A stretch of 64,000 bases of DNA from contig OZ059895.1 of assembly GCA_964057225.1 (NCBI GenBank), forward strand, positions 14,074,001 to 14,138,000. Direction: 5' to 3'. How positions within the stretch are numbered: position 1 is the first letter of the stretch; each line of letters starts with the position of its first letter. Under the pieces are notes generated by a model. It did not search any database. It was not told where the DNA came from and saw only the letters and a list, made by a program, of their open reading frames with translations. This document shows positions 12,540 through 64,000 of this stretch, one piece after another. The stretch comes from Auanema rhodensis. Lineage: Eukaryota; Animalia; Nematoda. The position numbers were made by a program, and so were the translations under genes.

Positions 12540-19312
<6,773 letters not shown>

Positions 19313-40015: not shown

Positions 40016-41554
40016 TGAGGAAGCGATGGCACAACTAGAAGAGGTCATGCATTGCAGTAACTGTAAAAGCCAATTGTTATGTTGCCGACATAGCAAAATC
40101 ATAATAAATGATGATTATGATGATGATGACCGTATAAGGTAATAGTTAGACAGACGATGTCCGATTGAACTAGACATGACCTAACATCATGAGCATGATC
40201 AACACATGAGGCCAGGTGGGTAATATGAAAGAAAGCACATGACGTTGATGTCTTCATCTCACTCTCTCTCTCTCTCTCATTACATGTTGTTATAACCGAA
40301 AATAGTCTTACATACTATTACTAGATTTAGATTTAGAACATGGAAAGAATATGATGAATTGAAGCAGAAATAATCAAAGAATTCAAAATAATTATATGAA
40401 TAAAGTTAAATTATTTAAAATATAATAACTTATATTAATTTATATTTAAATAAGATATGAGGAAATTCATGTAAACCCACAAAAAAAACTAAAAAAAGAG
40501 CGAAAAAGGGTAATTACAATACAAAGTACTCAAAGAATTGTATGTAAGCTCGCTTACAGAAGGCAATTATAACCGGAAGAATTCAGAAGCAATTGAGGTC
40601 ATGGGCGGTGACAATGCGGACACGGTCACACAATGAAAAGAAAATACAGAATAAGTAGAAAAATGGAGAAAAGGAAACACCAAAAGAGCATTTCTGTGAT
40701 TTTATTTTCAGAGAGAAATCAATAATTGAAATTTTAGAAAAATCTTCTAATCGAATAATTAGGTGTGTCTGCTTATTCTGTTCGTTGAACTTCCTCGGAT
40801 GCTACCCATTTAGAGGCTTCAGAACACTCCTTCAAACTACAAAAAAAACCAAAAATGTATGGCATACCGAATAGAGGTGTTGAAATTCGTGAAAAATCAA
40901 TATTTGGAAAGAAAAAGGTTTTTATTTTCTTAATTAGATCAAAATAAAAATACTATGTTAACTTGACAAATCAATTATTTTTATATATTATATGTATGTC
41001 TGATTATTTAAACAAACTGTCCCTCTATCCATTTCTTGAGAGATGAACATTTCCAAAAACAGGGTTGAAATCGAAATAATAGAATATTTTTAGAAAAAAA
41101 CATATATTTTGATTGAATATATACTATATAAACTCTCAAAATATCTAAAATTATTGAAGTTTTTTTTAGTTTGTAGAAGATTTCTGGTGTCTGTAAGATA
41201 GGGGCATCGGGCATTTCATCGCAAATGACTGTAGTTATTTCATTTTTTTTCTTTCAACCCTATACTTTATTAAAAAAATTCTAAATATTATAATAAATAT
41301 AATTTATCTGCAAATATATATATATATATAAATATAAATATATTTTATTTGGTCTAATAAATAACAAAGAAAATATAGTTTTGTATAATTTAGAAAATTC
41401 TAAGAAAATATTTCAATGCTTCAATAAACAATCTTATTTTTTATAATTATTATAAAGATTAAACAACAACAAATTCAAAAAATCATTTTATTATTATAAA
41501 TATAATTAATAAAATCTGATATCGAAATAGATAAATTGAGTATTTGTAGTTAAA

Positions 41555-43102: not shown

Positions 43103-43626
43103 CTATATGATATAGTTAAGAATAATTCTGCAATTAGGCTATACACAACGATGTTTTAACAATAAATATTTCAAAATACGAAAACAAATGAACAAAAACG
43201 AGATGAATTTCAAAACTTTTGATTCATGCAAAGTGAAAAATTATTTATTTTTCCAACAAAGAAAAAAAAAGAAAATTTATAAGAACAAATAATAGAAATA
43301 TGTTATACTTTCATATAATTTATCTAAATGCCACAACATCAAGATTACATATAAACGTGCAGATGTTTAAGTTCAACAAAAAAAATTATAAAATACTTTG
43401 AACTATGAAAGTTTCATGAAAAAAAGTTTTTAATCTTGAACATATGATCAACTCATTTTACCATATATATATATATATATGTATATCAGCACATTGAATG
43501 TGAACATTGAACAACAGAAATCTCAGATGTTTTTTTGAAATATATATTCTCTCAAGTTTAATAATTCAGTTAACATCAGAGTTCAAAGTAACTCAAGCAC
43601 ACATGTCACAAGGCTCTCTGAAAAAC

Positions 43627-43729
43627 AGACACAACACGTATTCATACCATGCGACAGCGAGGAGACACTGCTTTATTGGTTTAATTACCAAAGTTTGAAG
43701 TACTTTCCTGATTCAACCAGAAACATTCT
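43627..43729 (+). pseudogene. Degenerate, truncated SL1 RNA gene in opposite orientation at the left array border
   Basis: 43678-43699 GGTTTAATTACCAAAGTTTGAA (2 mismatches to SL1) followed by GTACTTTCCTGATTCAACCAGAAACATTCT, cut before the Sm site. Upstream remnants AGACACAACACGT and GAGGAGACACTGCTT are retained. Confidence 0.85.
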
Positions 43730-43730
43730 C

Positions 43731-46700
43731 ATCACATAGACGTGTTGTGTCTCTCCCCCCAACATGATAAAGACCGTCTCTCTTGACTAGACACCATGGG
43801 TCATACACACGTGTAGGCTACATCGAACTTGGCTCATCTCAACTACAATTCCCAGAATGATTATCATCTTCGTTGATTTTTCATTTTTAAAAATCCAAAG
43901 AACTTGATTCATCCAATGATTTTCGATTCATGTTGCTCTCCAGTGGAGAGCGTTCCAAAATTTAATTCGAACACAGAATGTTTCTGGTTGAATCAGGAAA
44001 GTACCTCAAACTTGGGTAATTAAACCGACGAAGCAGTGTCACCTCCCAGTGGCATCAATGCACATGTCGTATCACATAGACGTGTTGTGTCTCTCCCCCC
44101 AACATGATATAGACCGTCTCTCTTGACTAGACACCATGGGTCATACACACGTGTAGGCTACATCGAACTTGGCTCATCTCAACTACAATTCCCAGAATGA
44201 TTATCATCTTCGTTGATTTTTCATTTTTAAAAATCCAAAGAACTTGATTCATCCAATGATTTTCGATTCATGTTGCTCTCCAGTGGAGAGCGTTCCAAAA
44301 TTTAATTCGAACACAGAATGTTTCTGGTTGAATCAGGAAAGTACCTCAAACTTGGGTAATTAAACCGACGAAGCAGTGTCACCTCCCAGTGGCATCAATG
44401 CACATGTCGTATCACATAGACGTGTTGTGTCTCTCCCCCCAACATGATATAGACCGTCTCTCTTGACTAGACACCATGGGTCATACACACGTGTAGGCTA
44501 CATCGAACTTGGCTCATCTCAACTACAATTCCCAGAATGATTATCATCTTCGTTGATTTTTCATTTTTAAAAATCCAAAGAACTTGATTCATCCAATGAT
44601 TTTCGATTCATGTTGCTCTCCAGTGGAGAGCGTTCCAAAATTTAATTCGAACACAGAATGTTTCTGGTTGAATCAGGAAAGTACCTCAAACTTGGGTAAT
44701 TAAACCGACGAAGCAGTGTCACCTCCCAGTGGCATCAATGCACATGTCGTATCACATAGACGTGTTGTGTCTCTCCCCCCAACATGATATAGACCGTCTC
44801 TCTTGACTAGACACCATGGGTCATACACACGTGTAGGCTACATCGAACTTGGCTCATCTCAACTACAATTCCCAGAATGATTATCATCTTCGTTGATTTT
44901 TCATTTTTAAAAATCCAAAGAACTTGATTCATCCAATGATTTTCGATTCATGTTGCTCTCCAGTGGAGAGCGTTCCAAAATTTAATTCGAACACAGAATG
45001 TTTCTGGTTGAATCAGGAAAGTACCTCAAACTTGGGTAATTAAACCGACGAAGCAGTGTCACCTCCCAGTGGCATCAATGCACATGTCGTATCACATAGA
45101 CGTGTTGTGTCTCTCCCCCCAACATGATATAGACCGTCTCTCTTGACTAGACACCATGGGTCATACACACGTGTAGGCTACATCGAACTTGGCTCATCTC
45201 AACTACAATTCCCAGAATGATTATCATCTTCGTTGATTTTTCATTTTTAAAAATCCAAAGAACTTGATTCATCCAATGATTTTCGATTCATGTTGCTCTC
45301 CAGTGGAGAGCGTTCCAAAATTTAATTCGAACACAGAATGTTTCTGGTTGAATCAGGAAAGTACCTCAAACTTGGGTAATTAAACCGACGAAGCAGTGTC
45401 ACCTCCCAGTGGCATCAATGCACATGTCGTATCACATAGACGTGTTGTGTCTCTCCCCCCAACATGATATAGACCGTCTCTCTTGACTAGACACCATGGG
45501 TCATACACACGTGTAGGCTACATCGAACTTGGCTCATCTCAACTACAATTCCCAGAATGATTATCATCTTCGTTGATTTTTCATTTTTAAAAATCCAAAG
45601 AACTTGATTCATCCAATGATTTTCGATTCATGTTGCTCTCCAGTGGAGAGCGTTCCAAAATTTAATTCGAACACAGAATGTTTCTGGTTGAATCAGGAAA
45701 GTACCTCAAACTTGGGTAATTAAACCGACGAAGCAGTGTCACCTCCCAGTGGCATCAATGCACATGTCGTATCACATAGACGTGTTGTGTCTCTCCCCCC
45801 AACATGATATAGACCGTCTCTCTTGACTAGACACCATGGGTCATACACACGTGTAGGCTACATCGAACTTGGCTCATCTCAACTACAATTCCCAGAATGA
45901 TTATCATCTTCGTTGATTTTTCATTTTTAAAAATCCAAAGAACTTGATTCATCCAATGATTTTCGATTCATGTTGCTCTCCAGTGGAGAGCGTTCCAAAA
46001 TTTAATTCGAACACAGAATGTTTCTGGTTGAATCAGGAAAGTACCTCAAACTTGGGTAATTAAACCGAAGAAGCAGTGTCACCTCCCAGTGGCATCAATG
46101 CACGTGTCGTATCACATAGACGTGTTGTGTCTCTCCCCCCAACATGGTATAGACCGTCTCTCTTGACTAGACACCATGGGTCATACACACGTGTAGGCTA
46201 CATCCGAACTTGGCTCATCTCAACTATAATTCCCAGAATGATTATCATTTTCGTTGATTTTTCAATTTTAAAAATCCAAAGAACTTGATTCATCCAATGA
46301 TTTTCGATTCATGTTGCTCTCCAATGGAGAGCGTTCCAAAATTTAATTCGAACACAGAATGTTTCTGGTTGAATCAGGAAAGTACCTCAAACTTGGGTAA
46401 TTAAACCGACGATGCAGTGTCACCTCCCAGTGGCATCAATGCACGTGTCGTATCACATAGACGTGTTGTGTCTCTCCCCCCAACATGGTATAGACCGTCT
46501 CTCTTGACTAGACACCATGGGTCATACACACGTGTAGGCTACATCCGAACTTGGCTCATCTCAACTATAATTCCCAGAATGATTATCATCTTCGTTGATT
46601 TTTCAATTTTAAAATTCCAAAGAACTTGATTCATCCAATGATTTTCGATTCATGTTGCTCTCCAGTGGAGAGCGTTCCAAAATTTAATTCGAACACAGAA

Positions 46701-49700
46701 TGTTTCTGGTTGAATCAGGAAAGTACCTCAAACTTGGGTAATTAAACCGACGAAGCAGTGTCACCTCCCAGTGGCATCAATGCAAGTGTCGTATCACATA
46801 GACGTGTTGTATCTCTCCCCCCAACATGGTATAGACCGTCTCTCTTGACTAGACACCATGGGTCATACACACGTGTAGGCTACATCCGAACTTGGCTCAT
46901 CTCAACTATAATTCCCAGAATGATTATCATTTTCGTTGATTTTTCAATTTTAAAAATCCAAAGAACTTGATTCATCCAATGATTTTCGATTCATGTTGCT
47001 CTCCAGTGGAGAGCGTTCCAAAATTTAATTCGAACACAGAATGTTTCTGGTTGAATCAGGAAAGTACCTCAAACTTGGGTAATTAAACCGACGATGCAGT
47101 GTCACCTCCCAGTGGCATCAATGCAAGTGTCGTATCACATAGACGTGTTGTGTCTCTCCCCCCAACATGATAAAGACCGTCTCTCTTGACTAGACACCAT
47201 GGGTCATACACACGTGTAGGCTACATCGAACTTGGCTCATCTCAACTATAATTCCCAGAATGATTATCATCTTCGTTGATTTTTCAATTTTAAAATTCCA
47301 AAGAACTTGATTCATCCAATGATTTTCGATTCATGTTGCTCTCCAGTGGAGAGCGTTCCAAAATTTAATTCGAACACAGAATGTTTCTGGTTGAATCAGG
47401 AAAGTACCTCAAACTTGGGTAATTAAACCGACGATGTAGTGTCACCTCCCAGTGGCATCAATGCAAGTGTCGTATCACATAGACGTGTTGTATCTCTCCC
47501 CCCAACATGATAAAGACCGTCTCTCTTGACTAGACACCATGGGTCATACACACGTGTAGGCTACATCCGAACTTGGCTCATCTCAACTATAATTCCCAGA
47601 ATGATTATCATTTTCGTTGATTTTTCAATTTTAAAAATCCAAAGAACTTGATTCTTCCAATGATTTTCGATTCATGTTGCTCTCCAGTGGAGAGCGTTCC
47701 AAAATTTAATTCGAACACAGAATGTTTCTGGTTGAATCAGGAAAGTACCTCAAACTTGGGTAATTAAACCGACGATGCAGTGTCACCTCCCAGTGGCATC
47801 AATGCAAGTGTCGTATCACATAGACGTGTTGTATCTCTCCCCCCAACATGATAAAGACCGTCTCTCTTGACTAGACACCATGAGTCATACACACGTGTAG
47901 GCTACATCCGAACTTGGCTCATCTCAACTATAATTCCCAGAATGATTATCATTTTCGTTGATTTTTCAATTTTAAAAATCCAAAGAACTTGATTCATCCA
48001 ATGATTTTCGATTCATGTTGCTCTCCAATGGAGAGCGTTCCAAAATTTAATTCGAACACAGAATGTTTCTGGTTGAATCAGGAAAGTACCTCAAACTTGG
48101 GTAATTAAACCGACGATGCAGTGTCACCTCCCAGTGGCATCAATGCAAGTGTCGTATCACATAGACGTGTTGTATCTCTCCCCCCAACATGGTATAGACC
48201 GTCTCTCTTGACTAGACACCATGGGTCATACACACGTGTAGGCTACATCCGAACTTGGCTCATCTCAACTATAATTCCCAGAATGATTATCATTTTCGTT
48301 GATTTTTCAATTTTAAAAATCCAAAGAACTTGATTCATCCAATGATTTTCGATTCATGTTGCTCTCCAATGGAGAGCGTTCCAAAATTTAATTCGAACAC
48401 AGAATGTTTCTGGTTGAATCAGGAAAGTACCTCAAACTTGGGTAATTAAACCGATGAAGTAGTGTCACCTCCCAGTGGCATCAATGCACGTGTCGTATCA
48501 CATAGACGTGTTGTGTCTCTCCCCCCAACATGATAAAGACCGTCTCTCTTGACTAGACACCATGGGTCATACACACGTGTAGGCTACAACGAACTTGGCT
48601 CATCTCAACTATAATTCCCAGAATGATTATCATTTTCGTTGATTTTTCAATTTTAAAAATCCAAAGAACTTGATTCATCCAATGATTTTCGATTCATGTT
48701 GCTCTCCAATGGAGAGCGTTCCAAAATTTAATTCGAACACAGAATGTTTCTGGTTGAATCAGGAAAGTACCTCAAACTTGGGTAATTAAACCGACGATGC
48801 AGTGTCACCTCCCAGTGGCATCAATGCACGTGTCGTATCACATAGACGTGCTGTGTCTCTCCCCCCAACATGGTATAGACCGTCTCTCTTGACTAGACAC
48901 CATGGGTCATACACACGTGTAGGCTACATCCGAACTTGGCTCATCTCAACTACAATTCCCAGAATGATTATCATCCTCATTGATTTTTCAATTTTAAAAA
49001 TCCAAAGAACTTGATTCATCTAATGATTTTCGATTCATGTTGCTCTCCAGTGGAGAGCGTTCCAAAATTTAATTCGAACACAGAATGTTTCTGGTTGAAT
49101 CAGGAAAGTACCTCAAACTTGGGTAATTAAACCGACGATGTAGTGTCACCTCCCAGTGGCATCAATGCAAGTGTCGTATCACATAGACGTGTTGTATCTC
49201 TCCCCCCAACATGATAAAGACCGTCTCTCTTGACTAGACACCATGGGTCATACACACGTGTAGGCTACATCCGAACTTGGCTCATCTTAACTATAATTCC
49301 CAGAATGATTATCATTTTCGTTGATTTTTCAATTTTAAAAATCCAAAGAACTTGATTCTTCCAATGATTTTCGATTCATGTTGCTCTCCAGTGGAGAGCG
49401 TTCCAAAATTTAATTCGAACACAGAATGTTTCTGGTTGAATCAGGAAAGTACCTCAAACTTGGGTAATTAAACCGACGATGCAGTCTCACCTCCCAGTGG
49501 CATCAATGCAAGTGTCGTATCACATAGACGTGTTGTATCTCTCCCCCCAACATGGTATAGACCGTCTCTCTTGACTAGACACCATGGGTCATGCACACGT
49601 GGAGGCTACATCTGAACTTGGCTCATCTCAACTATAATTCCCAGAATGATTATCATTTTCGTTGATTTTTCAATTTTAAAAATCCAAAGAACTTGATTCT

Positions 49701-51929
49701 TCCAATGATTTTCGATTCATGTTGCTCTCCAGTGGAGAGCGTTCCAAAATTTATTTCGAACACAGAATGTTTCTGGTTGAATCAGGAAAGTACCTCAAAC
49801 TTGGGTAATTAAACCGACGATGCAGTCTCACCTCCCAGTGGCATCAATGCAAGTGTCGTATCACATAGACGTGTTGTATCTCTCCCCCCAACATGGTATA
49901 GACCGTCTCTCTTGACTAGACACCATGGGTCATGCACACGTGGAGGCTACATCTGAACTTGGCTCATCTCAACTATAATTCCCAGAATGATTATCATTTT
50001 CGTTGATTTTTCAATTTTAAAAATCCAAAGAACTTGATTCATCCAATGATTTTCGATTCATGTTGCTCTCCAATGGAGAGCGTTCCAAAATTTAATTCGA
50101 ACACAGAATGTTTCTGGTTGAATCAGGAAAGTACCTCAAACTTGGGTAATTAAACCGACGATGCAGTGTCACCTCCCAGTGGCATCAATGCAAGTGTCGT
50201 ATCACATAGACGTGTTGTATCTCTCCCCCCAACATGGTATAGACCGTCTCTCTTGACTAGACACCATGGGTCATACACACGTGTAGGCTACATCCGAACT
50301 TGGCTCATCTCAACTATAATTCCCAGAATGATTATCATTTTCGTTGATTTTTCAATTTTAAAAATACAAAGAACTTGATTCATCCAATGATTTTCGATTC
50401 ATGTTGCTCTCCAATGGAGAGCGTTCCAAAATTTAATTCGAACACAGAATGTTTCTGGTTGAATCAGGAAAGTACCTCAAACTTGGGTAATTAAACCGAC
50501 GATGCAGTGTCACCTCCCAGTGGCATCAATGCACGTGTCGTATCACATAGACGTGCTGTGTCTCTCCCCCCAACATGGTATAGACCGTCTCTCTTGACTA
50601 GACACCATGGGTCATACACACGTGTAGGCTACATCCGAACTTGGCTCATCTCAACTACAATTCCCAGAATGATTATCATCCTCATTGATTTTTCAATTTT
50701 AAAAATCCAAAGAACTTGATTCATCTAATGATTTTCGATTCATGTTGCTCTCCAGTGGAGAGCGTTCCAAAATTTAATTCGAACACAGAATGTTTCTGGT
50801 TGAATCAGGAAAGTACCTCAAACTTGGGTAATTAAACCGACGATGCAGTGTCACCTCCCAGTGGCATCAATGCACGTGTCGTATCACATAGACGTGCTGT
50901 GTCTCTCCCCCCAACATGATAAAGACCGTCTCTCTTGACTAGACACCATGGGTCATACACACGTGTAGGCTACATCCGAACTTGGCTCATCTCAACTACA
51001 ATTCCCAGAATGATTATCATCCTCATTGATTTTTCAATTTTAAAAATCCAAAGAACTTGATTCATCTAATGATTTTCGATTCATGTTGCTCTCCAGTGGA
51101 GAGCGTTCCAAAATTTAATTCGAACACAGAATGTTTCTGGTTGAATCAGGAAAGTACCTCAAACTTGGGTAATTAAACCGACGATGTAGTGTCACCTCCC
51201 AGTGGCATCAATGCAAGTGTCGTATCACATAGACGTGTTGTATCTCTCCCCCCAACATGATAAAGACCGTCTCTCTTGACTAAACACCATGGGTCATACA
51301 CACGTGTAGGCTACATCCGAACTTGGCTCATCTTAACTATAATTCCCAGAATGATTATCATTTTCGTTGATTTTTCAATTTTAAAAATCCAAAGAACTTG
51401 ATTCTTCCAATGATTTTCGATTCATGTTGCTCTCCAGTGGAGAGCGTTCCAAAATTTAATTCGAACACAGAATGTTTCTGGTTGAATCAGGAAAGTACCT
51501 CAAACTTGGGTAATTAAACCGACGATGCAGTGTCACCTCCCAGTGGCATCAATGCAAGTGTCGTATCACATAGACGTGTTGTATCTCTCCCCCCAACATG
51601 GTATAGACCGTCTCTCTTGACTAGACACCATGGGTCATACACACGTGTAGGCTACATCCGAACTTGGCTCATCTCAACTATAATTCCCAGAATGATTATC
51701 ATTTTCGTTGATTTTTCAATTTTAAAAATCCAAAGAACTTGATTCATCCAATGATTTTCGATTCATGTTGCTCTCCAGTGGAGAGCGTTCCAAAATTTAA
51801 TTCGAACACAGAACGTTTCTGGTTGAATCAGGAAAGTACCTCAAACTTGGGTAATTAAACCGACGATGCAGTGTCACCTCCCAGTGGCATCAATGCACGT
51901 TTCGTATCCCATTGGGGTGTTGTGCATCT
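43731..51929 (-). ncRNA. sls-1: Tandem array of 24 SL1 spliced-leader RNA genes, 340/341-bp unit
   Basis: Each unit contains the reverse complement of GGTTTAATTACCCAAGTTTGAG|GTACTTTCC...AAATTTTGGAAC GCTCTCC-ACT-GGAGAGC. SL 5' ends at 44026, 44366, 44706, 45046, 45386, 45726, 46066, 46407, 46748, 47089, 47429, 47770, 48111, 48452, 48792, 49133, 49474, 49815, 50156, 50497, 50838, 51179, 51520 and 51861. Confidence 0.97.
43931..44026 (-). ncRNA. sls-1: Representative SL1 snRNA gene (~96 nt)
   Basis: 22-nt SL1 exon identical to the canonical nematode SL1 (44005-44026), GT donor, Sm-binding site AATTTTGG and a terminal 7-bp hairpin. The 3' end is estimated. Confidence 0.95.
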
Positions 51930-51942
51930 TTTAGAGCGATAT

Positions 51943-54900
51943 CGTTCCATTCGGAGATCAATACGTAGCAAGCAGGTTAGAATCAGACGACATGAGGCTG
52001 AGAGAGGACGACACGCCCTTCATGTGGAACACAGCCTTTAGCTTTGCCTTATGGATTGACTATGGATGGTTGGTCTTCCTTTCTTAGCTCTCTTTTACTT
52101 TATATCTTTATGTTGACTTATATAACTTATTGTAATCATGTAGACATAATAAACCTTTCTTTCTCGAGTCTTATGTTTATCCATTATGCTCTATATCTAC
52201 CGCTACATTTGGAATACTATTACACTCATCTTGTAGGCTTTATTGGCCTATAGGATCGATGTGAGAGCATAACGGAACGTGGAGATTCCACCTCGAACGT
52301 TTCTCTTATTTTCTTAAATTTTATTCACTCTCGTAATTTTCATTTCATTTAACTTTCTCCTATCCATTGCCATCTTCTCTACGCTAAAACACAAAACGGA
52401 GGGGCCAACATCGTTATAGGGAACAGATGCAAGGAACTCTCATAATAAGAGAGAAAAATTACACATTTTGGGAAGAATTTATTTTACTTGATCCCGTTGT
52501 TCACAATTTTGTCATGTCTGAACCTAAGTCACATATCCTTGTTATTAACATCTGATTATACTGTTACCCGACCTCGAAGCCACATGAGGACTTTAGGCTG
52601 AATTCGTGAACAGATTCACCTAAAGATTTTATATATTTTGATTACCCACACCATTCTCCTCTTAAGGATTGATTTCGGCTTTGAGGAAAGAATAACTCCA
52701 GTTATTTCTTAAATTTTGTGGATGAAAAGCATGCCAATTTGAATTTTAAATAATTTTGCGATAAGGACTATTATATTTTGCGTTTAAAATCGTTCAGACA
52801 ACTTTTAGCATTTACCATCCAAAAAATATAACAAAACGCTTAAAAATCGTACGGGAAACCTCACAACAAGTGAGAGGATGTTTAATTTAATAACTTACAT
52901 TCGCTATAGTCCGAAAAATCCTGCGATATTCTCACAAACTGATCTCCCAATTTAAATTTATTCGTCAGGTCGAGTTGGCTAAAGCATATTAGTTGGATTT
53001 TCTCCCCATACTATATGTCACCTTCCTCATACCGTTTTGTTGTTTAGAAACATGAGACTCAATTCCAAATCATCTTATTCTTTTTATAATTTCGTATAGT
53101 TCTTGTAAATTTTAGTCAGCTATGTAACTTCAATATTATAAAACGAGATCTTTGGTTTGCAAAACGACTACGGTAGATTTTCTTAAAAAAGATCCTTACT
53201 TCCCGTTGAACCATGAACGAACGAATTAAGTATGCAATTGGGACTAGTAATTCCTCTTGGATAGATTGATGGATTACCAAAGGCCAATTTTAATACAACT
53301 TTTTGGAATGCCTAAGGGAGTTTGCGACTAAAAATCAGAAATTTCTATAATAAAGAGAAGGGAATAAGCCCATTGAGACTAGGCAATCATCCATAATGTG
53401 GGCGAAGAGAAAAGAAAAATGCAAATGCTATACAAATTGGACCCAAAAGACCAAGATAACCAAAGTCCAATTCCAAAGTACGGTAGAAGGCGGATCTAAA
53501 GTTATGGCCAGAACCTTAGATTCATTCCTATCCTTCCGACTTGACCAAACCAGTTGTCAGTCTCAATCTAACTTTTCCCAACTTACCACCAACAACTAAA
53601 CGTACATACCCGCCCAATTACGTTCAAATTCCATCATCCCACACGTAATCAGACACTCGAGGTTTTTTTCAAACCAAGAGCCCTAACAAGGTGGAGAGAA
53701 GGTATAACTCAGCAGTACCTCTTAGTACACACTCCAACCCGGATCCCCGTGATTCAGCTCCAGTAACTAGAAGCCAAACTCGCGCGCAAAGTGTCGCTAT
53801 CATCAACGAAGACACAGCAGAGGAGAAACCTAACATCGAAAAATTTTACACACCTCGCGCTAGTACGTTTTCTCCTTCAGAACATTTTAGCGATCCGGAC
53901 TACACACCATCCGGAGACGACGAGCGATCCTTGATCATAGACGAACAGACACCGAACACTACTACGAAAGAAAAGAAGACACAAACGCGCATTTGTTAAA
54001 GAATGTTTATTTCCTGTGGATCAAGATAGAGGAATGGAAGTTGAAGATTTTGAAACTTTTCAATCGAAGTTCAACATGTGGAGCAGCGCACAACACTCGC
54101 TCCAAAGCAAGGAACAGCGACTCAGATGACGACAGTGACATCGAAATTGTTGAATTTATACACGGAAACAATAACAAAGAATTAGACACTGAAATTGACT
54201 CACAAGACCCATCGGATCAAAACTGGATACCATCAAGAAGAAGATAAAACAACTACATTGATTACACTATTGTTAAACATTCTACATGAAATCTTTTTAA
54301 GGAAACTAGAGCTAAAAAAAAAATAATTTTACCAATACAAGCAAAAGATAGATGAGCAGTAAGCTATAACATAACGAGCAGTCAAGTTTCAAGCAAACCG
54401 AAAAAAAATTAGCTACAAAATATCATAAACGTTACTCCGATTTCAAATAATTTCCCTTAAAATCCGAAGAAATGAAAGATGAGAGACATCATATTGCAAT
54501 TTCAGCTAAGCAACAGTCATCATCAAGTAATTAATGATTCATTTCTGGAAATTATACGGGATTGTTTTAATAATTCCAAACAAATAATGTTTTCTTTCAA
54601 AGCTGAAGAAACAGCCTAGCTTTATTGAGAATATAGCTTAACTCTCGCTACTCTGCTCTATATTGGTTAGACATACAGCGCTGTGCCCAAAATAATACTT
54701 ACATGCACTTTCGCTGATAAAATATAGCTCTAGTATTCTTAAAAGATTGTGTTTTTGCTTTATACTCATGTATACTTAATTTTTATTAAATTTTTTAGAC
54801 AATATTGTTAAGGATAATATTGTATAATTTTGTATTATTTGAACAACAATAATGTATTTTAACATGTAAAACTTCTAAACCTCTTGCTACGATTGAAACA

Positions 54901-55286
54901 AGCCACACATTATTATAGTTGCGAGGACGCGACATAAACTCGAAAAAATGGCTTCCATCCGGATGATCAATACGTAGCAGGCGGGTTAGAGCTAGACGAC
55001 AAGAGACGAGAAGAGCTGACACGCCCTTTATATGGAACTCAGGCTTTAGTTCTGTCTCATGGAATGACTAAGGATGGCTTGTCATCTCCTCTAGCTCACC
55101 TATAGTTTATATCTCTTTATTTCTTATCGTAACTTATTGTAATCATTATGTAGAATAAACCTTTTTTTTCATGAGTCTTATGTTTATTCATTATGCTCTA
55201 TATCTACCGCTACATTTGGAATACTGTATCGCACATCTTATAGACTACATTGGTCTATAGGATAGATGCGAGAGCACAACGGAACG
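51943..55286 (+). mobile_element. Degenerate LTR retrotransposon inserted in the SL1 array
   Basis: Diverged direct repeats at 51943-52279 (337 bp) and 54951-55286 (336 bp), each with AATAAA and the shared block CATTATGCTCTATATCTACCGCTACATTTGGAATACT. A PBS follows LTR1 immediately. The ~2.7-kb interior has only broken ORFs (53396-54247, low complexity, TRSQTR/TRSKAR motifs). No RT or integrase was recognised, and no TSD was seen. Confidence 0.75.
52280..52292 (+). other. Primer-binding site complementary to tRNA-Gln 3' end
   Basis: TGGAGATTCCACC matches the tRNA-Gln PBS TGGAGGTTCCACC at 12/13 positions and abuts the end of LTR1. Confidence 0.7.
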
Positions 55287-56203
55287 CACTATGGGTCATA
55301 CACACGTGGAGGCTACATCGAACTTGGCTCATCTCAACTATAATTCCCAGAATGATTATCATCTTCGTTGATTTTTCAATTTTAAAAATCCAAAGAACTT
55401 GATTCATCCAATGATTTTCGATTCATATTGCTCTCCAGTGGAGAGCGTTCCAAAATTTAATTCGAACACAGAATCTTTCTGGTTGAATCAGGAAAGTACC
55501 TCAAACTTGGGTAATTAAACCGACGATGCAGTGTCACCTCCCAGTGGCATCAATGCAAGTGTCGTATCACATAGACGTGTTGTATCTCTCCCCCCAACAT
55601 GGTATAGACCGTCTCTCTTGACTAGACACCATGGGTCATACACACGTGTAGGCTACATCTAAACTTGGCTCATCTCAACTATAATTCCCAGAATGATTAT
55701 CATCTTCGTTGATTTTTCATTTTTAAAAATCCAAAGAACTTGATTCATCCAATGATTTTCGATTCATGTTGCTCTCCAGTGGAGAGCGTTCCAAAATTTA
55801 ATTCGAACACAGAATGTTTCTGGTTGAATCAGGAAAGTACCTCAAACTTGGGTAATTAAACCGAAGAAGCAGTGTCACCTCCCAGTGGCATCAATGCAAG
55901 TGTCGTATCACATAGACGTGCTGTATCTCTCCCCCCAACATGGTATAGACCGTCTCTCTTGACTTGACACCATGGGTCATACACACGTGTAGGCTACATC
56001 TGAACTTGGCTCATCTCAACTATAATTCCCAGAATGATTATCATCTTCGTTGATTTTTCATTTTTAAAAATCCAAAGAACTTGATTCATCCAATGATTTT
56101 CGATTCATGTTGCTCTCCAGTGGAGAGCGTTCCAAAATTTAATTCGAACACAGAATGTTTCTGGTTGAATCAGGAAAGTACCTCAAACTTGGGTAATTAA
56201 ACC
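55287..56203 (-). ncRNA. sls-1: Three further SL1 RNA genes (5' ends 55521, 55862, 56203)
   Basis: The same 341-bp unit resumes after the LTR element. The copy at 56203 has foreign sequence starting ~4 nt upstream of its first G. Confidence 0.96.
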
Positions 56204-56254
56204 GAACAAATATCATTAATTGTGAATCCACCAAAAGGGTTAAATTCGTTTAAA

Positions 56255-57934
56255 CTATGTGGATCTTGTCCGCTTTTTGTACCATTTGCTAACCTGAAAA
56301 TATAAGTAAAACTAAAATAATTCAATCTACAAGATACCATAATCCATATGGATAACGACCTACTCCCAGTTCGTGATGGTCAGTGTTTTGAGTTATAGTT
56401 TTCCAATCATTCAGTTGTATAGAAGCCAACAAAAACTTAAAAAACAAAAATAATATAAACGCTCAAGTTCAAATTCAAGTTTCTCACTTTAGCCAAAGCA
56501 GCATCAATAATAGTTTTGATGAACCGCCCATTAACTATTGGATCTTTCTTCCAATTTTCGGAGATACAACCTATAAAGTAAATAATACATTGGCACATAC
56601 GATAGAGTTGTATACCCAAAGTCAATAATAGTTTGCATGGTAATTACAATGTGGACTAGTTAAGCCTCGTTGAATTGATCTCTAGCTGTTTTTCCTCCAG
56701 TAAATCCATCAGAAGGTTCCATGTAAAGATCTGGAAATATATCAGCTTTTAAGTATTTTTTATGGCTCAACCTTGTAGATCATTTCCATTTTATAAATAA
56801 AACAAAGACAAATAATTTATTTATTAAATATTACAAAGATGGAAAATACCAGAATCATCATATAAATCTATCGTACATGTGTATTCCGAATTACCGTAAT
56901 TCTTCTTGTATTTTAACTCCATCATGATTATCATTGGCATCGGCGTCTGTATCTACGGAAAATCAACATTTTTTTACTTCAATCACATAACACTTACCTT
57001 TCTAATCGTTGAATATCATCTTTCTTACTTTCACATTTGTTTTGCATATTATGTTGATATCCAGTAAAAACTCATTAATCGGAGGCCCATCTATTGGAGA
57101 CTCTATCATTAACAACATTATTATTACGTATTAAATAAGCCAATTCTTTTTTAATTTTTTCAAAAACAAATATTCTTCTCACCTGCTTCTTCTTCTCTTC
57201 TAACTCTTTGATCTTCAGCCGTCTGGATATTATCAGTTAAACTCGAATCTTCTTTTATCTTTTTCGAAGAGACTTCAGGAGAATGGTGAGTTTTACTTGA
57301 TTCACTCAATGCGTCTTGGCTGAAAATATAGAATTAGTTTACTGTACTTTACTTATATCGATTTAGAATTACCGTAATTCTTCTTGTATTTTAACTCCAT
57401 CATGATTATCATCGGCATCGGCGTCTGTATCTACTGAAAAGTTTTTTCCTTTTTTAATTTTTTCAAAAACAAATATTCTTCTCACCTGCTTCTTCTTCTC
57501 TTCTAACTCTTTGATATGTTGCTCCATCAAAGCCAAAGTTAACATGTCTAAACTTCTCAAAACTGTCATAATCACTAATATCATCGCCAGGAAGTTGACA
57601 AGGAAACCCTTGATTAGAAAGCATTGCTAAAATTAATTTGTTTTTACTGCAATCACATAACACTTACTTTTAAAAATATTTTGTGCAAGATGTTTAAAGT
57701 AATCACAGACTCCCATTTTTTTATCATTAGCAACAGGATAATACTTCTGATTTAAATAATCAGCCCCTTTTTTAAATATTTTTTTAGCTTTGATTGATAT
57801 CTATAATATTTTGAAAACTAAAAAAATATTCAACAGAGATTAACCGTCTGGATATTATCAGTTAAACTCGAGTCTTCTTTTATCTTTTCCGAAGAGACTT
57901 CAGGAGAATGGTGAGTTTTACTTGAATCGCTCAT
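56255..57934 (-). CDS. Orphan multi-exon gene with internally duplicated exons; ~220-aa open frame over 6 exons to TAG at 57002-57004, then further exon-like blocks to 56255 (possibly a pseudogene)
   Basis: TTTTCAG-GCCACA-ATG, then GT-AG exons that join in phase: MSDSSKTHHSPEVSSEKIKEDSSLTDNIQT / ISIKAKKIFKKGADYLNQKYYPVANDKKMGVCDYFKHLAQNIFK / TMLSNQGFPCQLPGDDISDYDSFEKFRHVNFGFDGATYQRVRREEEA / VDTDADADDNHDGVKIQEELR / QDALSESSKTHHSPEVSSKKIKEDSSLTDNIQTAEDQRVRREEEA / ESPIDGPP...FND*. Confidence 0.6.
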
Positions 57935-58160
57935 TGTGGCCTGAAAATATAGAATTAGTTTACTCTACTTTACTTATAATCAAGCAAATCGCGAAAAATA
58001 ATTGATATAATCGTATGAAATGGGAAAACTTTTTAATTTCTTTTTAATTTAGTGAAAATTCTAATTTTATATAGTTTTCTTGAGGTTTGATGAAGAATGA
58101 AACGGATTGAGTTTGAATTCAAGCTGAAGGTATAATGATTCAATAGCGATGTGATATCTA

Positions 58161-58381
58161 CAGTCCTGTGCGATACCTACGGTCCTGTCCAGTCCTTTCC
58201 TATGGCATAGTTTCAAACAAGTAAGCTTCAGCATCTGAATTTTATCTATGAAGATAAGTTGGTTTTTCTGCATTCATTATCGTTTTTTAATATTCAAAAT
58301 ATATTTCTTTGAATTTTTGTAGTTTGTCAGAGAAGGTATAAGGGTTTCTAGTGGGTGTGCAACCCTCATCGCACAGGACTG
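58161..58381. mobile_element. Tc1/mariner-type MITE (221 bp) in the palindrome spacer
   Basis: Perfect 14-bp terminal inverted repeats CAGTCCTGTGCGAT ... ATCGCACAGGACTG, flanked by TA on both sides (58159-60 and 58382-83). Confidence 0.8.
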
Positions 58382-58996
58382 TATATGAGATATGAAACGA
58401 TAATATTATTTGTCTTACAATAAATAAACTGATATGGAATTTTAATTATTGCTTGTATAATCATTTCGCCGATAAAGAGGGCGTTTTAGATAAAGCTGAT
58501 GCTATTCAAGATAAAGGTATATAAAGGTGTAACTAAAGAATATATTAAAATAATAATAACAATAATAATATAATTATATATTATAATTATTATTATATTA
58601 ATTATAATATAATTATATGAATTTGAATGAAGAGCGGAAGTAATGTTACTGTTATCTGTTAAGCTGCTTTTTATACGAGAAAAATTGTTCTAGAATTTTC
58701 TGAACTGTTGTCTTCGTTGTAAGACTTATTAAGTACAATATTGTCTCATACCGTATCTTATACATCTTCGCATAGAAGCTCATCATTATACTTTCAGCTT
58801 GAATTCAAACCCAATCCGTTTCATTCTTTATCAAACCTCAAGAAAACTATATAAAATTAGAATTTTCACTACTTGTAGAAATTAAAAAGTTTTCCCATTT
58901 CATACGATTATATCAATTATTTTTCGCGATTTGCTTGATTATAAGTAAAGTAGAGTAAACTAATTCTATATTTGTATTATATTTGTAGTATATATT

Positions 58997-60268
58997 TGGA
59001 GCAACATATCAAAGAGTTAGAAGAGAAGAAGAAGCAGGTGAGAAGAATATTTGTTTTTGAAAAAATTAAAAAAGGAAAAAACTTTTCAGTAGATACAGAC
59101 GCCGATGCCGATGATAATCATGATGGAGTTAAAATACAAGAAGAATTACGGTAATTCTAAATCGATATAAGTAAAGTACAGTAAACTAATTCTATATTTT
59201 CAGCCAAGACGCATTGAGTGAATCAAGTAAAACTCACCATTCTCCTGAAGTCTCTTCGAAAAAGATAAAAGAAGATTCGAGTTTAACTGATAATATCCAG
59301 ACGGCTGAAGATCAAAGAGTTAGAAGAGAAGAAGAAGCAGGTGAGAAGAATATTTGTTTTTGAAAAAATTAAAAAAGAATTGGCTTATTTAATACGTAAT
59401 AATAATGTTGTTAATGATAGAGTCTCCAATAGATGGGCCTCCGATTAATGAGTTTTTACTGGATATCAACATAATATGCAAAACAAATGTGAAAGTAAGA
59501 AAGATGATATTCAACGATTAGAAAGGTAAGTGTTATGTGATTGAAGTAAAAAAATGTTGATTTTCCGTAGATACAGACGCCGATGCCAATGATAATCATG
59601 ATGGAGTTAAAATACAAGAAGAATTACGGTAATTCGGAATACACATGTACGATAGATTTATATGATGATTCTGGTATTTTCCATCTTTGTAATATTTAAT
59701 AAATAAATTATTTGTCTTTGTTTTATTTATAAAATGGAAATGATCTACAAGGTTGAGCCATAAAAAATACTTAAAAGCTGATATATTTCCAGATCTTTAC
59801 ATGGAACCTTCTGATGGATTTACTGGAGGAAAAACAGCTAGAGATCAATTCAACGAGGCTTAACTAGTCCACATTGTAATTACCATGCAAACTATTATTG
59901 ACTTTGGGTATACAACTCTATCGTATGTGCCAATGTATTATTTACTTTATAGGTTGTATCTCCGAAAATTGGAAGAAAGATCCAATAGTTAATGGGCGGT
60001 TCATCAAAACTATTATTGATGCTGCTTTGGCTAAAGTGAGAAACTTGAATTTGAACTTGAGCGTTTATATTATTTTTGTTTTTTAAGTTTTTGTTGGCTT
60101 CTATACAACTGAATGATTGGAAAACTATAACTCAAAACACTGACCATCACGAACTGGGAGTAGGTCGTTATCCATATGGATTATGGTATCTTGTAGATTG
60201 AATTATTTTAGTTTTACTTATATTTTCAGGTTAGCAAATGGTACAAAAAGCGGACAAGATCCACATAG
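58997..60268 (+). pseudogene. 5'-deleted mirror copy of the orphan gene
   Basis: Reverse complement of 56255-57526. It lacks the equivalent of 57527-57944 (acceptor, ATG, exons 1-2 and most of exon 3), which is replaced by a 23-bp filler at 58974-58996. Confidence 0.75.
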
Positions 60269-60319
60269 TTTAAACGAATTTAACCCTTTTGGTGGATTCA
60301 CAATTAATGATATTTGTTC

Positions 60320-63300
60320 GGTTTAATTACCCAAGTTTGAGGTACTTTCCTGATTCAACCAGAAACATTCTGTGTTCGAATTAAATTTTGGAACGCTCTC
60401 CACTGGAGAGCAACATGAATCGAAAATCATTGGATGAATCAAGTTCTTTGGATTTTTAAAAATGAAAAATCAACGAAGATGATAATCATTCTGGGAATTA
60501 TAGTTGAGATGAGCCAAGTTCAGATGTAGCCTACACGTGTGTATGACCCATGGTGTCAAGTCAAGAGAGACGGTCTATACCATGTTGGGGGGAGAGATAC
60601 AGCACGTCTATGTGATACGACACTTGCATTGATGCCACTGGGAGGTGACACTGCTTCGTCGGTTTAATTACCCAAGTTTGAGGTTCTTTTCTGATTCAAC
60701 CAGAAACATTCTGTGTTCGAATTAAATTTTGGAACGCTCTCCACTGGAGAGCAACATGAATCGAAAATCATTGGATGAATCAAGATCTTTGGATTTTTAA
60801 AATTGAAAAATCAACGAAGATGATAATCATTCTGGGAATTATAGTTGAGATGAGCCAAGTTCAGATGTAGCCTACACGTGTCTATGACCCATGGTGTCTA
60901 GTCAAGAGAGACAGTCTATACCATGTTGGGGGAAGAGACACAACACGTCTATGTGATACGACACGTGCATTGATGCCACTGGGAGGTGACACTGCTTCGT
61001 CGGTTTAATTACCCAAGTTTGAGGTTCTTTTCTGATTCAACCAGAAACATTCTGTGTTCGAATTAAATTTTGGAACGCTCTCCACTGGAGAGCAACATGA
61101 ATCGAAAATCATTGGATGAATCAAGATCTTTGGATTTTTAAAATTGAAAAATCAACGAAGATGATAATCATTTCGGGAATTATAGTTGAGATGAGCCAAG
61201 TTCAGATGTAGCCTACACGTGTGTATGACCCATGGTGTCTAGTCAAGAGAGACAGTCTATACCATGTTGGGGGAAGAGATACAACACGTCTATGTGATAC
61301 GACACGTGCATTGATGCCACTGGGAGGTGACACTGCTTCGTCGGTTTAATTACCCAAGTTTGAGGTTCTTTTCTGATTCAACCAGAAACATTCTGTGTTC
61401 GAATTAAATTTTGGAACGCTCTCCACTGGAGAGCAACATGAATCGAAAATCATTGGATGAATCAAGATCTTTGGATTTTTAAAATTGAAAAATCAACGAA
61501 GATGATAATCATTTCGGGAATTATAGTTGAGATGAGCCAAGTTCAGATGTAGCCTACACGTGTGTATGACCCATGGTGTCTAGTCAAGAGAGACAGTCTA
61601 TACCATGTTGGGGGAAGAGACACAACACGTCTATGTGATACGACACGTGCATTGATGCCACTGGGAGGTGACACTGCATCGTCGGTTTAATTACCCAAGT
61701 TTGAGGTACTTTCCTGATTCAACCAGAAAGATTCTGTGTTCGAATTAAATTTTGGAACGCTCTCCACTGGAGAGCAACATGAATCGAAAATCATTGGATG
61801 AATCAAGTTCTTTGGATTTTTAAAAATGAAAAATCAACGAAGATGATAATCATTCTGGGAATTATAGTTGAGATGAGCCAAGTTCAGATGTAGCCTACAC
61901 GTGTCTATGACCCATGGTGTCTAGTCAAGAGAGACAGTCTATACCATGTTGGGGGAAGAGACACAACACGTCTATGTGATACGACACGTGCATTGATGCC
62001 ACTGGGAGGTGACACTGCTTCGTCGGTTTAATTACCCAAGTTTGAGGTACTTTCCTGATTCAACCAGAAACATTCTGTGTTCGAATTAAATTTTGGAACG
62101 CTCTCCACTGGAGAGCAATATGAATCGAAAATCATTGGATGAATCAAGTTCTTTGGATTTTTAAAATTGAAAAATCAATGAGGATGATAATCATTCTGGG
62201 AATTATAGTTGAGATGAGCCAAGTTCAGATGTAGCCTACACGTGTCTATGACCCATGGTGTCTAGTCAAGAGAGACAGTCTATACCATGTTGGGGGAAGA
62301 GACACAACACGTCTATGTGATACGACACGTGCATTGATGCCACTGGGAGGTGACACTGCTTCGTCGGTTTAATTACCCAAGTTTGAGGTACTTTCCTGAT
62401 TCAACCAGAAACATTCTGTGTTCGAATTAAATTTTGGAACGCTCTCCACTGGAGAGCAATATGAATCGAAAATCATTAGATGAATCAAGTTCTTTGAATT
62501 TTTAAAAATGAAAAATCAACGAAGATGATAATCATTTCGGGAATTATAGTTGAGATGAGCCAAGTTTAGATGTAGCCTACACGTGTGTATGACCCATGGT
62601 GTCTAGTCAAGAGAGACAGTCTATACCATGTTGGGGGAAGAGATACAACACGTCTATGTGATACGACACGTGCATTGATGCCACTGGGAGGTGACACTAC
62701 TTCATCGGTTTAATAACCCAAGTTTGAGGTACTTTCCTGATTCAACCAGAAACATTCTGTGTTCGAATTAAATTTTGGAACGCTCTCCACTGGAGAGCAA
62801 CATGAATCGAAAATCATTGGATGAATCAAGATCTTTGGATTTTTAAAATTGAAAAATCAACGAAGATGATAATCATTCTGGGAATTGTAGTTGAAATGAG
62901 CCAGGTTCGATGTAGCCTACACGTGTGTATGACCCATGGTATCTACTCAAGAGAGACGGTCTTTATCATGTTGGGGAGAGAGATACAACACGTCTATGTG
63001 ATACGACACGTGCATTGATGCCACTGGGAGGTGACACTGCTTCGTCGGTTTAATTACCCAAGTTTGAGGTACTTTCCTGATTCAACCAGAAACATTCTGT
63101 GTTCGAATTAAATTTTGGAACGCTCTCCACTGGAGAGCAACATGAATCAAAAATCATTGGATGAATCAAGTTCTTTGGATTTTTAAAATTGAAAAATCAA
63201 CGAAGATGATAATCATTTCGGGAATTATAGTTGAGATGAGCCAAGTTCAGATGTAGCCTCCACGTGTGTATGACCCATGGTGTCAAGTCAAGAGAGACAG

Positions 63301-64000
63301 TCTATACCATGTTGGGGGGAGAGATACAACACGTCTATGTGATACGACACGTGCATTGATGCCACTGGGAGGTGACACTGCATCGTCGGTTTAATTACCC
63401 AAGTTTGAGGTACTTTCCTGATTCAACCAGAAAGATTCTGTGTTCGAATTAAATTTTGGAACGCTCTCCACTGGAGAGCAACATGAATCAAAAATCATTG
63501 GATGAATCAAGTTCTTTGGATTTTTAAAATTGAAAAATCAACGAAGATGATAATCATTTTGGGAATTGTAGTTGAGATGAGCCAAGTTCGATGTAGCCTA
63601 CACGTGTGTATGACCCATGGTGTCTAGTCAAGAGAGACGGTCTTTATCATGTTGGGGGGAGAGATACAGCACGTCTATGTGATACGACACGTGCATTGAT
63701 GCCACTGGGAGGTGACACTGCTTCGTCGGTTTAATTACCCAAGTTTGAGGTACTTTCCTGATTCAACCAGAAAGATTCTGTGTTCGAATTAAATTTTGGA
63801 ACGCTCTCCACTGGAGAGCAACATGAATCAAAAATCATTGGATGAATCAAGTTCTTTGGATTTTTAAAATTGAAAAATCAACGAAGATGATAATCATTTC
63901 GGGAATTATAGTTGAGATGAGCCAAGTTCAGATGTAGCCTCCACGTGTGTATGACCCATGGTGTCAAGTCAAGAGAGACAGTCTATACCATGTTGGGGGG
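60320..64000 (+). ncRNA. sls-1: Tandem array of at least 11 SL1 RNA genes, continuing past the window end
   Basis: SL1 starts at 60320, 60661, 61002, 61343, 61684, 62025, 62366, 62707 (variant T9A), 63047, 63388 and 63728, each followed by a GT donor, Sm site and hairpin. Confidence 0.97.

What the first reader, a model, noticed from the sequence alone, without database searches (positions are those of the whole stretch)
43731..64000. Divergent, palindromic SL1 spliced-leader locus: two opposed SL1 arrays radiating from a gene-containing inverted repeat
Seen: 27 SL1 genes on the - strand and at least 11 on the + strand point away from a central palindrome whose ~1.3-kb non-SL arms look identical. 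Known: the C. elegans SL1 genes form a head-to-tail tandem array interleaved with 5S rDNA. Inference: the locus arose by inverted (fold-back) duplication of a gene+SL1 junction, and both arrays then expanded outward. The core may act as a shared divergent promoter, a boundary or an amplification origin. I am not aware of a described SL1 locus with this architecture.
Basis: partly seen in the sequence, partly recalled or inferred. Interest (0 to 1): 0.9.

Follow-up and report, generated by a model that had tools for sequence, protein, structure and literature searches.

The report
Palindromic SL1 spliced-leader gene cluster
Two tandem arrays of nematode SL1 trans-splicing RNA genes point away from each other around a 4-kb inverted repeat that carries two head-to-head copies of a small orphan gene; the layout is in the sequence and is most likely an old inverted duplication kept identical by copying between its arms, an unusual arrangement of ordinary parts, not a new mechanism.

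Summary
Observation confirmed. There are 27 SL1 genes on the minus strand and 11 on the plus strand, in 340/341-bp units without 5S rRNA. They diverge from a core at 56207-60319.

It is perfect over 1661 nt (55866-57526 against 58997-60657), which covers the 1320-nt non-SL arm plus the whole first SL1 unit. It drops to about 97% in the next unit and about 95% in a 195-nt inner arm pair. A 642-nt unique spacer, a 418-nt segment present only on the left, a 3.4-kb LTR-like insert only in the left array, and array-specific variants all argue against a simple fold-back artefact.

My reading: an older inverted duplication of a gene-to-SL1 junction, later overwritten by arm-to-arm gene conversion.

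The arms hold a spliced 243-aa orphan ORF, intact on the left and 5'-truncated on the right. Its trailing exon fragment runs straight into the first SL1 gene, so that gene has lost its upstream promoter region on both arms.

Physical proof is therefore missing.

The scan has noted other SL1 arrays and other palindromes in this same genome. I found no evidence for a promoter, boundary or origin role of the core.

The parts
43488..43730 (+). Decayed plus-oriented SL1 unit relic. It keeps a spacer/promoter remnant and SL1 RNA nt 1-52; the leader at 43678-43699 has 2 mismatches. It ends abruptly against the minus array, forming a convergent inversion junction.
43731..51929 (-). Minus-strand SL1 array, 24 units (M27-M04) of 340/341 bp. 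M21-M26 are identical to each other.
51930..55286 (.). LTR-like insertion present in the left array only. It has direct terminal repeats 51945-52279 and 54953-55286 at about 81-85% identity and no Pfam-recognisable ORF. About 39 nt of the SL1 unit are missing at the insertion site.
55287..56206 (-). Three core-proximal minus-strand SL1 units: M03 (cut by the insertion), M02 and M01.
55866..57526 (-). Left half of the perfect inverted repeat (1661 nt, 0 mismatches against 58997-60657). It comprises SL1 unit M01 plus the 1320-nt non-SL arm.
56197..56570 (-). Three in-phase exons (56570-56488, 56435-56338, 56293-56197; 92 aa) of a gene fragment. Its reading frame ends at a TAA formed by SL1 nt 5-7, so homology to the normal SL1 upstream region stops 0-2 nt before the SL1 5' end.
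56660..57934 (-). Predicted spliced orphan gene A, 243 aa, 7 exons: 57934-57845, 57800-57668, 57626-57486, 57433-57373, 57319-57183, 56952-56895, 56771-56660. All introns are GT-AG. A TTTTCAG acceptor sits 6 nt before the ATG. The gene contains internally duplicated modules. Exon 3 is weakly similar to the RNase H1 N-terminal domain.
57527..57944 (-). Left-only segment (418 nt). It holds the ATG exon, exon 2 and the 5' part of exon 3 of gene A, and is absent from the right arm.
57945..58139 (.). Left inner arm (195 nt), about 95% complementary to 58782-58973 (3 substitutions and one small complex indel). This is the upstream region of gene A.
58140..58781 (.). Unique non-palindromic spacer (642 nt). 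It contains a small element with 19-nt inverted ends (58156-58174 and 58368-58386).
58782..58973 (.). Right inner arm (192 nt).
58974..58996 (.). 23-nt filler that stands in place of the 418-nt left-only segment, marking a deletion in the right copy.
58997..60657 (+). Right half of the perfect inverted repeat. It holds the 5'-truncated copy of gene A (no ATG exon), the exon fragment, and SL1 unit P01.
60320..64000 (+). Plus-strand SL1 array, 11 units (P01-P11), running off the end of the window. P02-P07 carry variants not seen in the minus array.

Best explanation
This is a genuine genomic palindrome inside a stand-alone, 5S-free cluster of nematode SL1 spliced-leader RNA genes.

Proposed history (inferred):
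1. An SL1 array came to abut the last exons of a small protein-coding gene. The break lies within 0-2 nt of the SL1 RNA 5' end.
2. The block [upstream region - gene - SL1 units] was duplicated in inverted orientation by a fold-back or template-switch event. This left a 642-nt unique loop between the copies.
3. The right copy then lost 418 nt, including the ATG exon.
4. An LTR-like element entered the left array, and the two arrays drifted and were amplified locally.
5. Recently, a non-reciprocal copying event between the arms (gene conversion) made 1661 nt identical. The tract is bounded inside by the deletion heterology and outside, in register, at the first/second SL1 unit boundary.

How it works (inferred): each SL1 unit is transcribed from its own upstream region. 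Opposite orientation of the arrays is therefore a by-product with no demonstrated role. The first SL1 gene on each arm has lost its upstream region and is probably weak or silent.
For: Shown:
- SL1 counts and strands; 341-bp unit; full-length SL1 RNA features.
- 1661-nt perfect mirror identity with an abrupt inner end and 11 mismatches in the next 341 nt.
- Inner arms at about 95%.
- Unique spacer and arm-specific 418/23-nt difference.
- The deletion boundary lies inside exon 3 of a 7-exon in-frame model, so the right copy is the derived one.
- The LTR-like insert is present on the left only.
- Array-private variants exist. P01 differs from M01 at 1 site and from M02 at 4 sites, but from its own neighbour P02 at 11 sites.
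- Between 78% and 90% of sampled 31-mers of 56150-60380 are held by eight DNA runs from two studies, and 22-54% by three runs of a third organism.

Inferred: the order of events and gene conversion.
Against: - The structure therefore rests on one assembly.
- The 31-mer shares cannot prove that the 418-nt left-only segment or each junction is present in the other runs.
- Perfect identity over 1661 nt could partly reflect polishing of multi-mapping reads.
- The direction of conversion is only suggestive, because core-proximal units are a mixed variant type.
- Loss of promoter function in M01 and P01 is inferred from my own knowledge that nematode SL RNA genes need an upstream element. It was not tested here.
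Confidence: 0.6

Rival explanations
1. Assembly artefact: the inverted join, or the second arm, was created by the assembler from chimeric fold-back reads or by joining haplotypes or homoeologues head-to-head. The real locus would then have one orientation only.
For: No spanning reads could be examined. The arms are 100% identical over 1661 nt. The region is repetitive, and the genome may be polyploid or heterozygous. Other palindromes are reported by the scan in this assembly, which could reflect either biology or a recurrent artefact.
Against: - Fold-back chimeras give spacer-less, fully symmetric palindromes. Here there is a 642-nt non-self-complementary spacer, 95% inner arms and a 418-nt versus 23-nt asymmetry whose boundary falls inside an exon.
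- The LTR-like insert is in one array only, and the two arrays carry private variants.
- A head-to-head haplotype join would make the upstream regions mirror each other through the centre, which they do not.
Confidence: 0.15
2. No gene conversion. Instead, a very recent second event copied 1661 nt (arm plus one SL1 unit) in inverted orientation next to a pre-existing plus-strand array, creating the perfect arms de novo.
For: Zero differences over 1661 nt with sharp ends. P01 resembles the left-side units more than its own neighbours.
Against: - The outer end joins the plus array exactly in register: 60320 to 60661 is 341 nt. That needs homology-guided resolution, which is recombination or conversion.
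- The inner arms beyond the deletion are also inverted copies but diverged, so an older palindrome already existed.
Confidence: 0.15
3. The core is functional for the SL1 arrays. It might be a replication origin, boundary or bidirectional control region, so that both arrays are transcribed away from it (for example co-directionally with forks).
For: Only the geometry: all 38 SL1 genes point away from the core.
Against: - Nothing in the core resembles a known RNA or a regulatory family.
- The core is filled by a protein-coding gene pair and a small inverted-repeat element.
- The SL1 units next to the core are the ones that lost their upstream region.
- A decayed plus-oriented unit at the far end of the minus array shows that orientation flips happen here without a core.
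Confidence: 0.05
4. A foldback-type transposable element: long terminal inverted repeats built from tandem subrepeats (here SL1 units) around a unique middle.
For: The overall shape matches foldback elements. Such elements are reported in root-knot nematodes (title seen, PMC3169594; paper not read).
Against: - The subrepeats are complete, intact-looking SL1 RNA genes.
- The arrays are very unequal and extend beyond the window.
- No second copy of the core exists in the window.
- Element ends and target-site duplications cannot be defined.
Confidence: 0.03

Closest known systems
C. elegans 5S rDNA-SL1 tandem cluster (about 1-kb units on chromosome V)
   Same: Many copies of the SL1 RNA gene in tandem. 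The 22-nt leader is identical, and the donor site and Sm site are the same.
   Different: Here there is no 5S gene in the unit. The unit is 341 bp rather than about 1 kb. The genes form two opposed arrays around an inverted repeat rather than one head-to-tail array. Comparison papers: PMC8961926 and PMC8022731.
Stand-alone SL-gene satellite DNA of root-knot nematodes (MelSat01 / INC satDNA, Mi-SL1b; PMC9673304)
   Same: Short repeat units that each carry one SL RNA gene without 5S. The SL exon and Sm site are conserved while the rest of the unit varies.
   Different: This array carries the canonical leader. No palindromic arrangement or embedded gene is described there. Sequence identity to MelSat01 or Mi-SL1a was not tested, and the species of this window was not established.
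Large genomic palindromes homogenised by arm-to-arm gene conversion (for example human Y-chromosome ampliconic palindromes; from my own knowledge)
   Same: Near-identical inverted arms, a unique spacer, genes inside the arms, and identity in the arms higher than in the surrounding older sequence.
   Different: The scale is about 4 kb of core rather than tens of kb to Mb. The arms continue into tandem arrays of an RNA gene. One gene copy is truncated.
Fold-back inverted duplications with a short unique spacer, including the head-to-head rDNA palindrome of Tetrahymena with a non-palindromic centre (from my own knowledge)
   Same: RNA genes lie head-to-head and are transcribed away from a non-palindromic centre. 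Such a structure is thought to arise from a short inverted repeat and fold-back priming.
   Different: This one is chromosomal and germline-encoded rather than a developmentally made minichromosome. The spacer is 642 nt rather than about 28 nt. The flanks are tandem arrays.

Membership tests
Nematode SL1 spliced-leader RNA gene (Rfam RF00198) | 22-nt SL1 leader followed directly by a GU splice donor | tested here: met
   37 exact copies and 1 copy with one mismatch; GT follows the leader.
Nematode SL1 spliced-leader RNA gene (Rfam RF00198) | Sm-binding site AAUUUUGG between stem-loops, within a three-hairpin fold | tested here: met
   The cmscan alignment covers model positions 1-103. The MFE fold gives three hairpins, z = -2.6.
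Nematode SL1 spliced-leader RNA gene (Rfam RF00198) | Score at or above the Rfam gathering threshold (75 bits) | tested here: not met
   Score is 50-54 bits at E 2e-8 to 2e-7. Stem 1 pairs are not kept. I still call these SL1 genes on the three features above.
Nematode SL1 spliced-leader RNA gene (Rfam RF00198) | The leader is donated to mRNAs by trans-splicing | not testable with these tools
   No reads could be laid.
5S-linked SL1 repeat (Caenorhabditis type) | A 5S rRNA gene in every repeat unit | tested here: not met
   No 5S rRNA match anywhere in the 64-kb window. The 341-bp unit is too short to hold one.
Stand-alone SL-gene satellite (MelSat01 type) | A short unit of about 300 bp with one SL gene, arranged head-to-tail in long arrays | tested here: met
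   Units are 340/341 bp, with 24 + 3 and at least 11 copies. Sequence relationship to MelSat01 was not tested.
Genomic palindrome maintained by arm-to-arm gene conversion | Inverted arms with a unique, non-palindromic spacer | tested here: met
Genomic palindrome maintained by arm-to-arm gene conversion | Arm identity far above that of adjacent, equally inverted sequence (a conversion tract) | tested here: met
   0 differences in 1661 nt, against 11 in the next 341 nt and about 5% in the inner arms. At 3% divergence about 50 differences would be expected.
Genomic palindrome maintained by arm-to-arm gene conversion | The structure is present in native DNA (spanning molecules), and the arms co-evolve between species | not testable with these tools
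Runs of three coded organisms hold 22-90% of the words, but the architecture cannot be seen from that.
Foldback transposon | Defined element ends with target-site duplication, and multiple genomic copies | tested here: inconclusive
   The right array leaves the window. The left array ends at an inversion junction, not at a recognisable terminus. There is no second copy of the core in the window.
RNase H1 N-terminal (hybrid-binding, Pfam PF01693 Cauli_VI) domain protein, for the arm gene | Significant match to the domain | tested here: inconclusive
   No Pfam hit, even at E up to 10. However, phmmer gives E 3.5e-5 to a protein made of four such domains, BLASTP gives 29-35% identity over 34-45 aa, and hhalign gives 79% probability.

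The most novel reading that the evidence does not exclude
SL1 arrays in this genome colonise new sites starting from a promoter-less SL RNA copy. The array edge on both arms lies within 0-2 nt of the SL1 RNA 5' end, as expected for a retro-copied or transcription-start-associated break that later grew by recombination with other arrays. Palindrome formation plus arm-to-arm conversion would then be a regular way in which such gene-embedded SL1 clusters are kept and spread. This would link the several SL1 clusters with protein-coding 'cargo' and the other palindromes that the scan has noted on this chromosome.
Probability: 0.1. Interest if true: 0.6.

Novelty: new variant of a known kind. Interest (0 to 1): 0.35.

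Why it matters
SL1 RNA is needed to mature most nematode mRNAs, and its genes are usually drawn as a simple head-to-tail array. A cluster built as a palindrome, with a conversion tract that runs from a protein-coding gene into the first SL1 unit, matters in three ways:
- It shows how these arrays are rearranged and homogenised.
- It gives a natural pair of promoter-less SL1 genes for testing promoter requirements.
- It marks a place where assemblies are easily wrong.

It does not by itself reveal a new mechanism.

Tried and rejected
Reads and independent contigs:
No read evidence exists.
- Look-ups of junction-crossing ORFs in public contigs found nothing on record. One search used wrong ORF bounds and was corrected.
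- A word-index protein search with the junction ORF gave no hit.
- Two metagenome scans, with a spacer pattern and an arm-exon pattern, were blank.

Identity of the arm gene:
- Pfam on eight exon-bearing pieces gave nothing.
- PDB sequence search gave nothing meaningful.
- The ESM Atlas suggested PAZ/Argonaute for exon 2, at low recognition and low shared-feature counts. I rejected this as unsupported.
- A third HMMER hit (P0003) is a bacterial secreted repeat protein matching a short Cys-rich motif. I rejected it.

Other checks:
- No tRNA was found at 40000-58538, which covers the left arm and the left part of the spacer. No further Rfam family was found at 56100-58538.
- A whole-array higher-order repeat was looked for and not found; there are only local duplicated blocks.
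- A simple two-break inversion does not restore continuity at 43731, so I rejected it as the sole event.
- The species was not established.
Full report
**Observation**

The 22-nt SL1 leader occurs exactly 27 times on the minus strand and 10 times on the plus strand. The minus copies are 44005-51861 (24 copies) plus 55500, 55841 and 56182. The plus copies run from 60320 to 63749, with an eleventh copy at 62707 carrying one mismatch. None is expected by chance.

Tandem Repeats Finder reports a 341-bp unit at 96-98% identity. No family reaches Rfam's gathering score anywhere in the window, so there is no 5S rRNA gene. With the E-value threshold, each unit gives a full-length SL1 (RF00198) match at 50-54 bits, E 2e-8 to 2e-7, below the curated 75 bits. 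The RNA has the GU donor, the AAUUUUGG Sm site and three hairpins. These are intact-looking SL1 genes in a stand-alone 340/341-bp repeat.

**The core**

The non-SL arms are 100% complementary. Mirroring base by base gives no mismatch over 1661 nt, 55866-57526 against 58997-60657. That stretch is the 1320-nt arm plus the entire first SL1 unit on each side.
- Outward, the second units differ at 11 of 341 sites.
- Inward, identity stops dead at 57526/58997. The left side has 418 nt (57527-57944) where the right has a 23-nt filler (58974-58996).
- Further in, a 195/192-nt inner arm pair (57945-58139 and 58782-58973) is again inverted, but with three substitutions and a small complex indel.
- Between the inner arms lies a 642-nt spacer that is not self-complementary. 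It contains a 231-nt element with 19-nt inverted ends.

**What the arms encode**

On the minus strand of the left arm, a 7-exon model with canonical GT-AG introns of 41-230 nt stays in frame for 243 codons. Its ATG is preceded by a TTTTCAG acceptor. The model contains internally duplicated modules.

Downstream, three further exons keep a consistent phase for 92 codons. They end at a TAA formed by SL1 nucleotides 5-7. Similarity to the normal SL1 upstream sequence ends 0-2 nt before the SL1 5' end. Hence the first SL1 gene on both arms lacks the upstream region that all other units have.

The 57526 boundary lies inside exon 3, so the right copy is a 5'-truncated derivative without the ATG exon.

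The gene has no Pfam match and no word-index homologue. An exhaustive HMMER search gave three weak hits. The informative one is a protein made of four RNase H1 N-terminal (Cauli_VI) domains:
- HMMER E 3.5e-5.
- BLASTP 29-35% identity over 34-45 aa.
- hhalign 79% probability over 36 columns.

I treat this as a lead. The gene is best called an orphan.

**The arrays**
- The left array is interrupted at about 51930-55286 by an element with 330-340-nt direct terminal repeats at 81-85% identity. It has no recognisable protein, and about 39 nt of the SL1 unit are missing at the site. The right array has no such insert in its 11 units.
- P02-P07 carry variants absent from the minus array, and M04-M20 carry variants absent from the plus array.
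- M21-M26 are six identical units, and several other units recur at a distance. No array-wide higher-order period was found.
- P01 differs from M01 at one site, at the unit edge. It differs from M02 at 4 sites, but from its own neighbour P02 at 11 sites.
- At the far end, the minus array stops at 43731 against a decayed plus-oriented unit (43488-43730). That unit retains SL1 nt 1-52 with two mismatches in the leader. This is a second, older inversion junction.

**Real or artefact**

I could not lay reads. Attempts to obtain independent contigs through junction-crossing ORFs or metagenome scans were blank.

What remains is internal evidence. A fold-back chimera or a head-to-head haplotype join would be symmetric through its centre. 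This structure is not: it has a unique spacer, diverged inner arms, an arm-specific deletion whose edge falls inside an exon, a one-sided retroelement and array-private variants.

Eight DNA runs from two studies hold 78-90% of the sampled 31-mers of 56150-60380. Three runs of a third coded organism hold 22-54%. The sequence therefore exists outside this assembly, although this does not prove the architecture. I put a real palindrome at roughly 80-85% and an artefact at about 15%.

**History and mechanism**

The identical gene/SL1 junction in both arms means the junction predates the inverted duplication. The unique spacer fits a fold-back or template-switch origin.

Zero differences in 1661 nt, next to 3-5% divergence on both sides, is not compatible with one age for the whole palindrome. 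At 3% divergence about 50 differences would be expected. The simplest account is an older palindrome whose outer arms were recently overwritten by arm-to-arm gene conversion. The tract was stopped inside by the deletion heterology and resolved outside, in register, within the SL1 repeat. P01's resemblance to left-side units hints at left-to-right copying. This is only suggestive, because the core-proximal units are a mixed variant type.

Functionally, each unit should be transcribed from its own upstream region. This rests on my own knowledge of nematode SL RNA genes, which use an upstream element together with the leader sequence. The divergent orientation therefore needs no functional explanation. 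M01 and P01 are probably weak or silent.

I found nothing supporting a promoter, boundary or origin role of the core for the SL1 genes.

**Comparison with the known**

Tandem SL1 genes linked to 5S are the Caenorhabditis pattern (PMC8961926). Unlinked 5S and SL1 genes are reported in Oscheius (PMC8022731). Stand-alone SL-gene satellites are described in root-knot nematodes (PMC9673304). None of the papers retrieved describes opposed SL1 arrays around a gene-bearing palindrome.

Palindromes homogenised by conversion, and fold-back duplications with a spacer, are well known in other systems. This is therefore a new arrangement of known parts.

The scan has already noted other 5S-free SL1 arrays, another inverted duplication at an SL1 cluster about 0.7 Mb away, and other palindromes with conversion signatures in this same genome. 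I did not test those notes.

**Verdict**

Novelty is that of a new variant of a known kind, and interest is moderate to low (0.35). The most intriguing loose end is that the array edge coincides with the SL1 RNA 5' end.

Noticed in passing
window 43488-43730: A decayed plus-oriented SL1 unit (leader with 2 mismatches at 43678-43699, cut after SL1 RNA nt 52) directly abuts the minus-strand array. This is a second, older, convergent inversion junction at the far end of the array.
   Followed up: partly
window 51930-55286: A 3.4-kb element with 330-340-nt direct terminal repeats at only 81-85% identity, so it is old. It has no Pfam-recognisable ORF, sits in the left array only, and about 39 nt of the SL1 unit are missing at the site. 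The adjacent unit M03 is the most diverged unit of the array.
   Followed up: partly
window 56195-56210 and 60316-60331: The edge of SL1-array homology lies within 0-2 nt of the SL1 RNA 5' end on both arms. The open frame of the preceding exon ends at a TAA inside the leader. The chance of such a phase is roughly 1-3%. A retro-copy or a transcription-start-associated break could explain it.
   Followed up: partly
window 44027-46066: Six consecutive SL1 units (M21-M26) are identical to each other, indicating a recent local amplification at the distal end of the minus array.
   Followed up: yes
window 58156-58386: A small element with 19-nt inverted ends (95% complementary, 193 nt apart) lies inside the unique spacer. 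It is MITE-like. One weak match to its end (2 mismatches in 15 nt) lies at 41218-41232; there is no other copy in the window.
   Followed up: partly
window 57486-57626 (minus strand): Exon 3 of the arm gene is weakly similar to the RNase H1 N-terminal hybrid-binding domain: HMMER E 3.5e-5 and hhalign 79%, but no direct Pfam hit.
   Followed up: partly
window 62707-62728: One plus-strand SL1 gene (P08) has a T-to-A change at leader position 9. Its unit is also the most diverged of the plus array.
   Followed up: no
window 60410-60450 and the same place in each unit: An imperfect 18-bp tandem duplication (about 2.1 copies) lies just downstream of the SL1 RNA 3' end in many units. It may be a 3'-end formation signal.
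   Followed up: no
window 56150-60380: Four small runs guessed to be RNA each hold 14-15% of the sampled words of the core. That is about the share expected if the spliced arm gene is expressed.
   Followed up: no
window 13149-13685 (minus strand): A long open exon that reads as alpha-tubulin. An ORF at 8582-8962 looks like a kinesin-associated protein fragment. So ordinary housekeeping genes lie 30-35 kb from the SL1 cluster.
   Followed up: no
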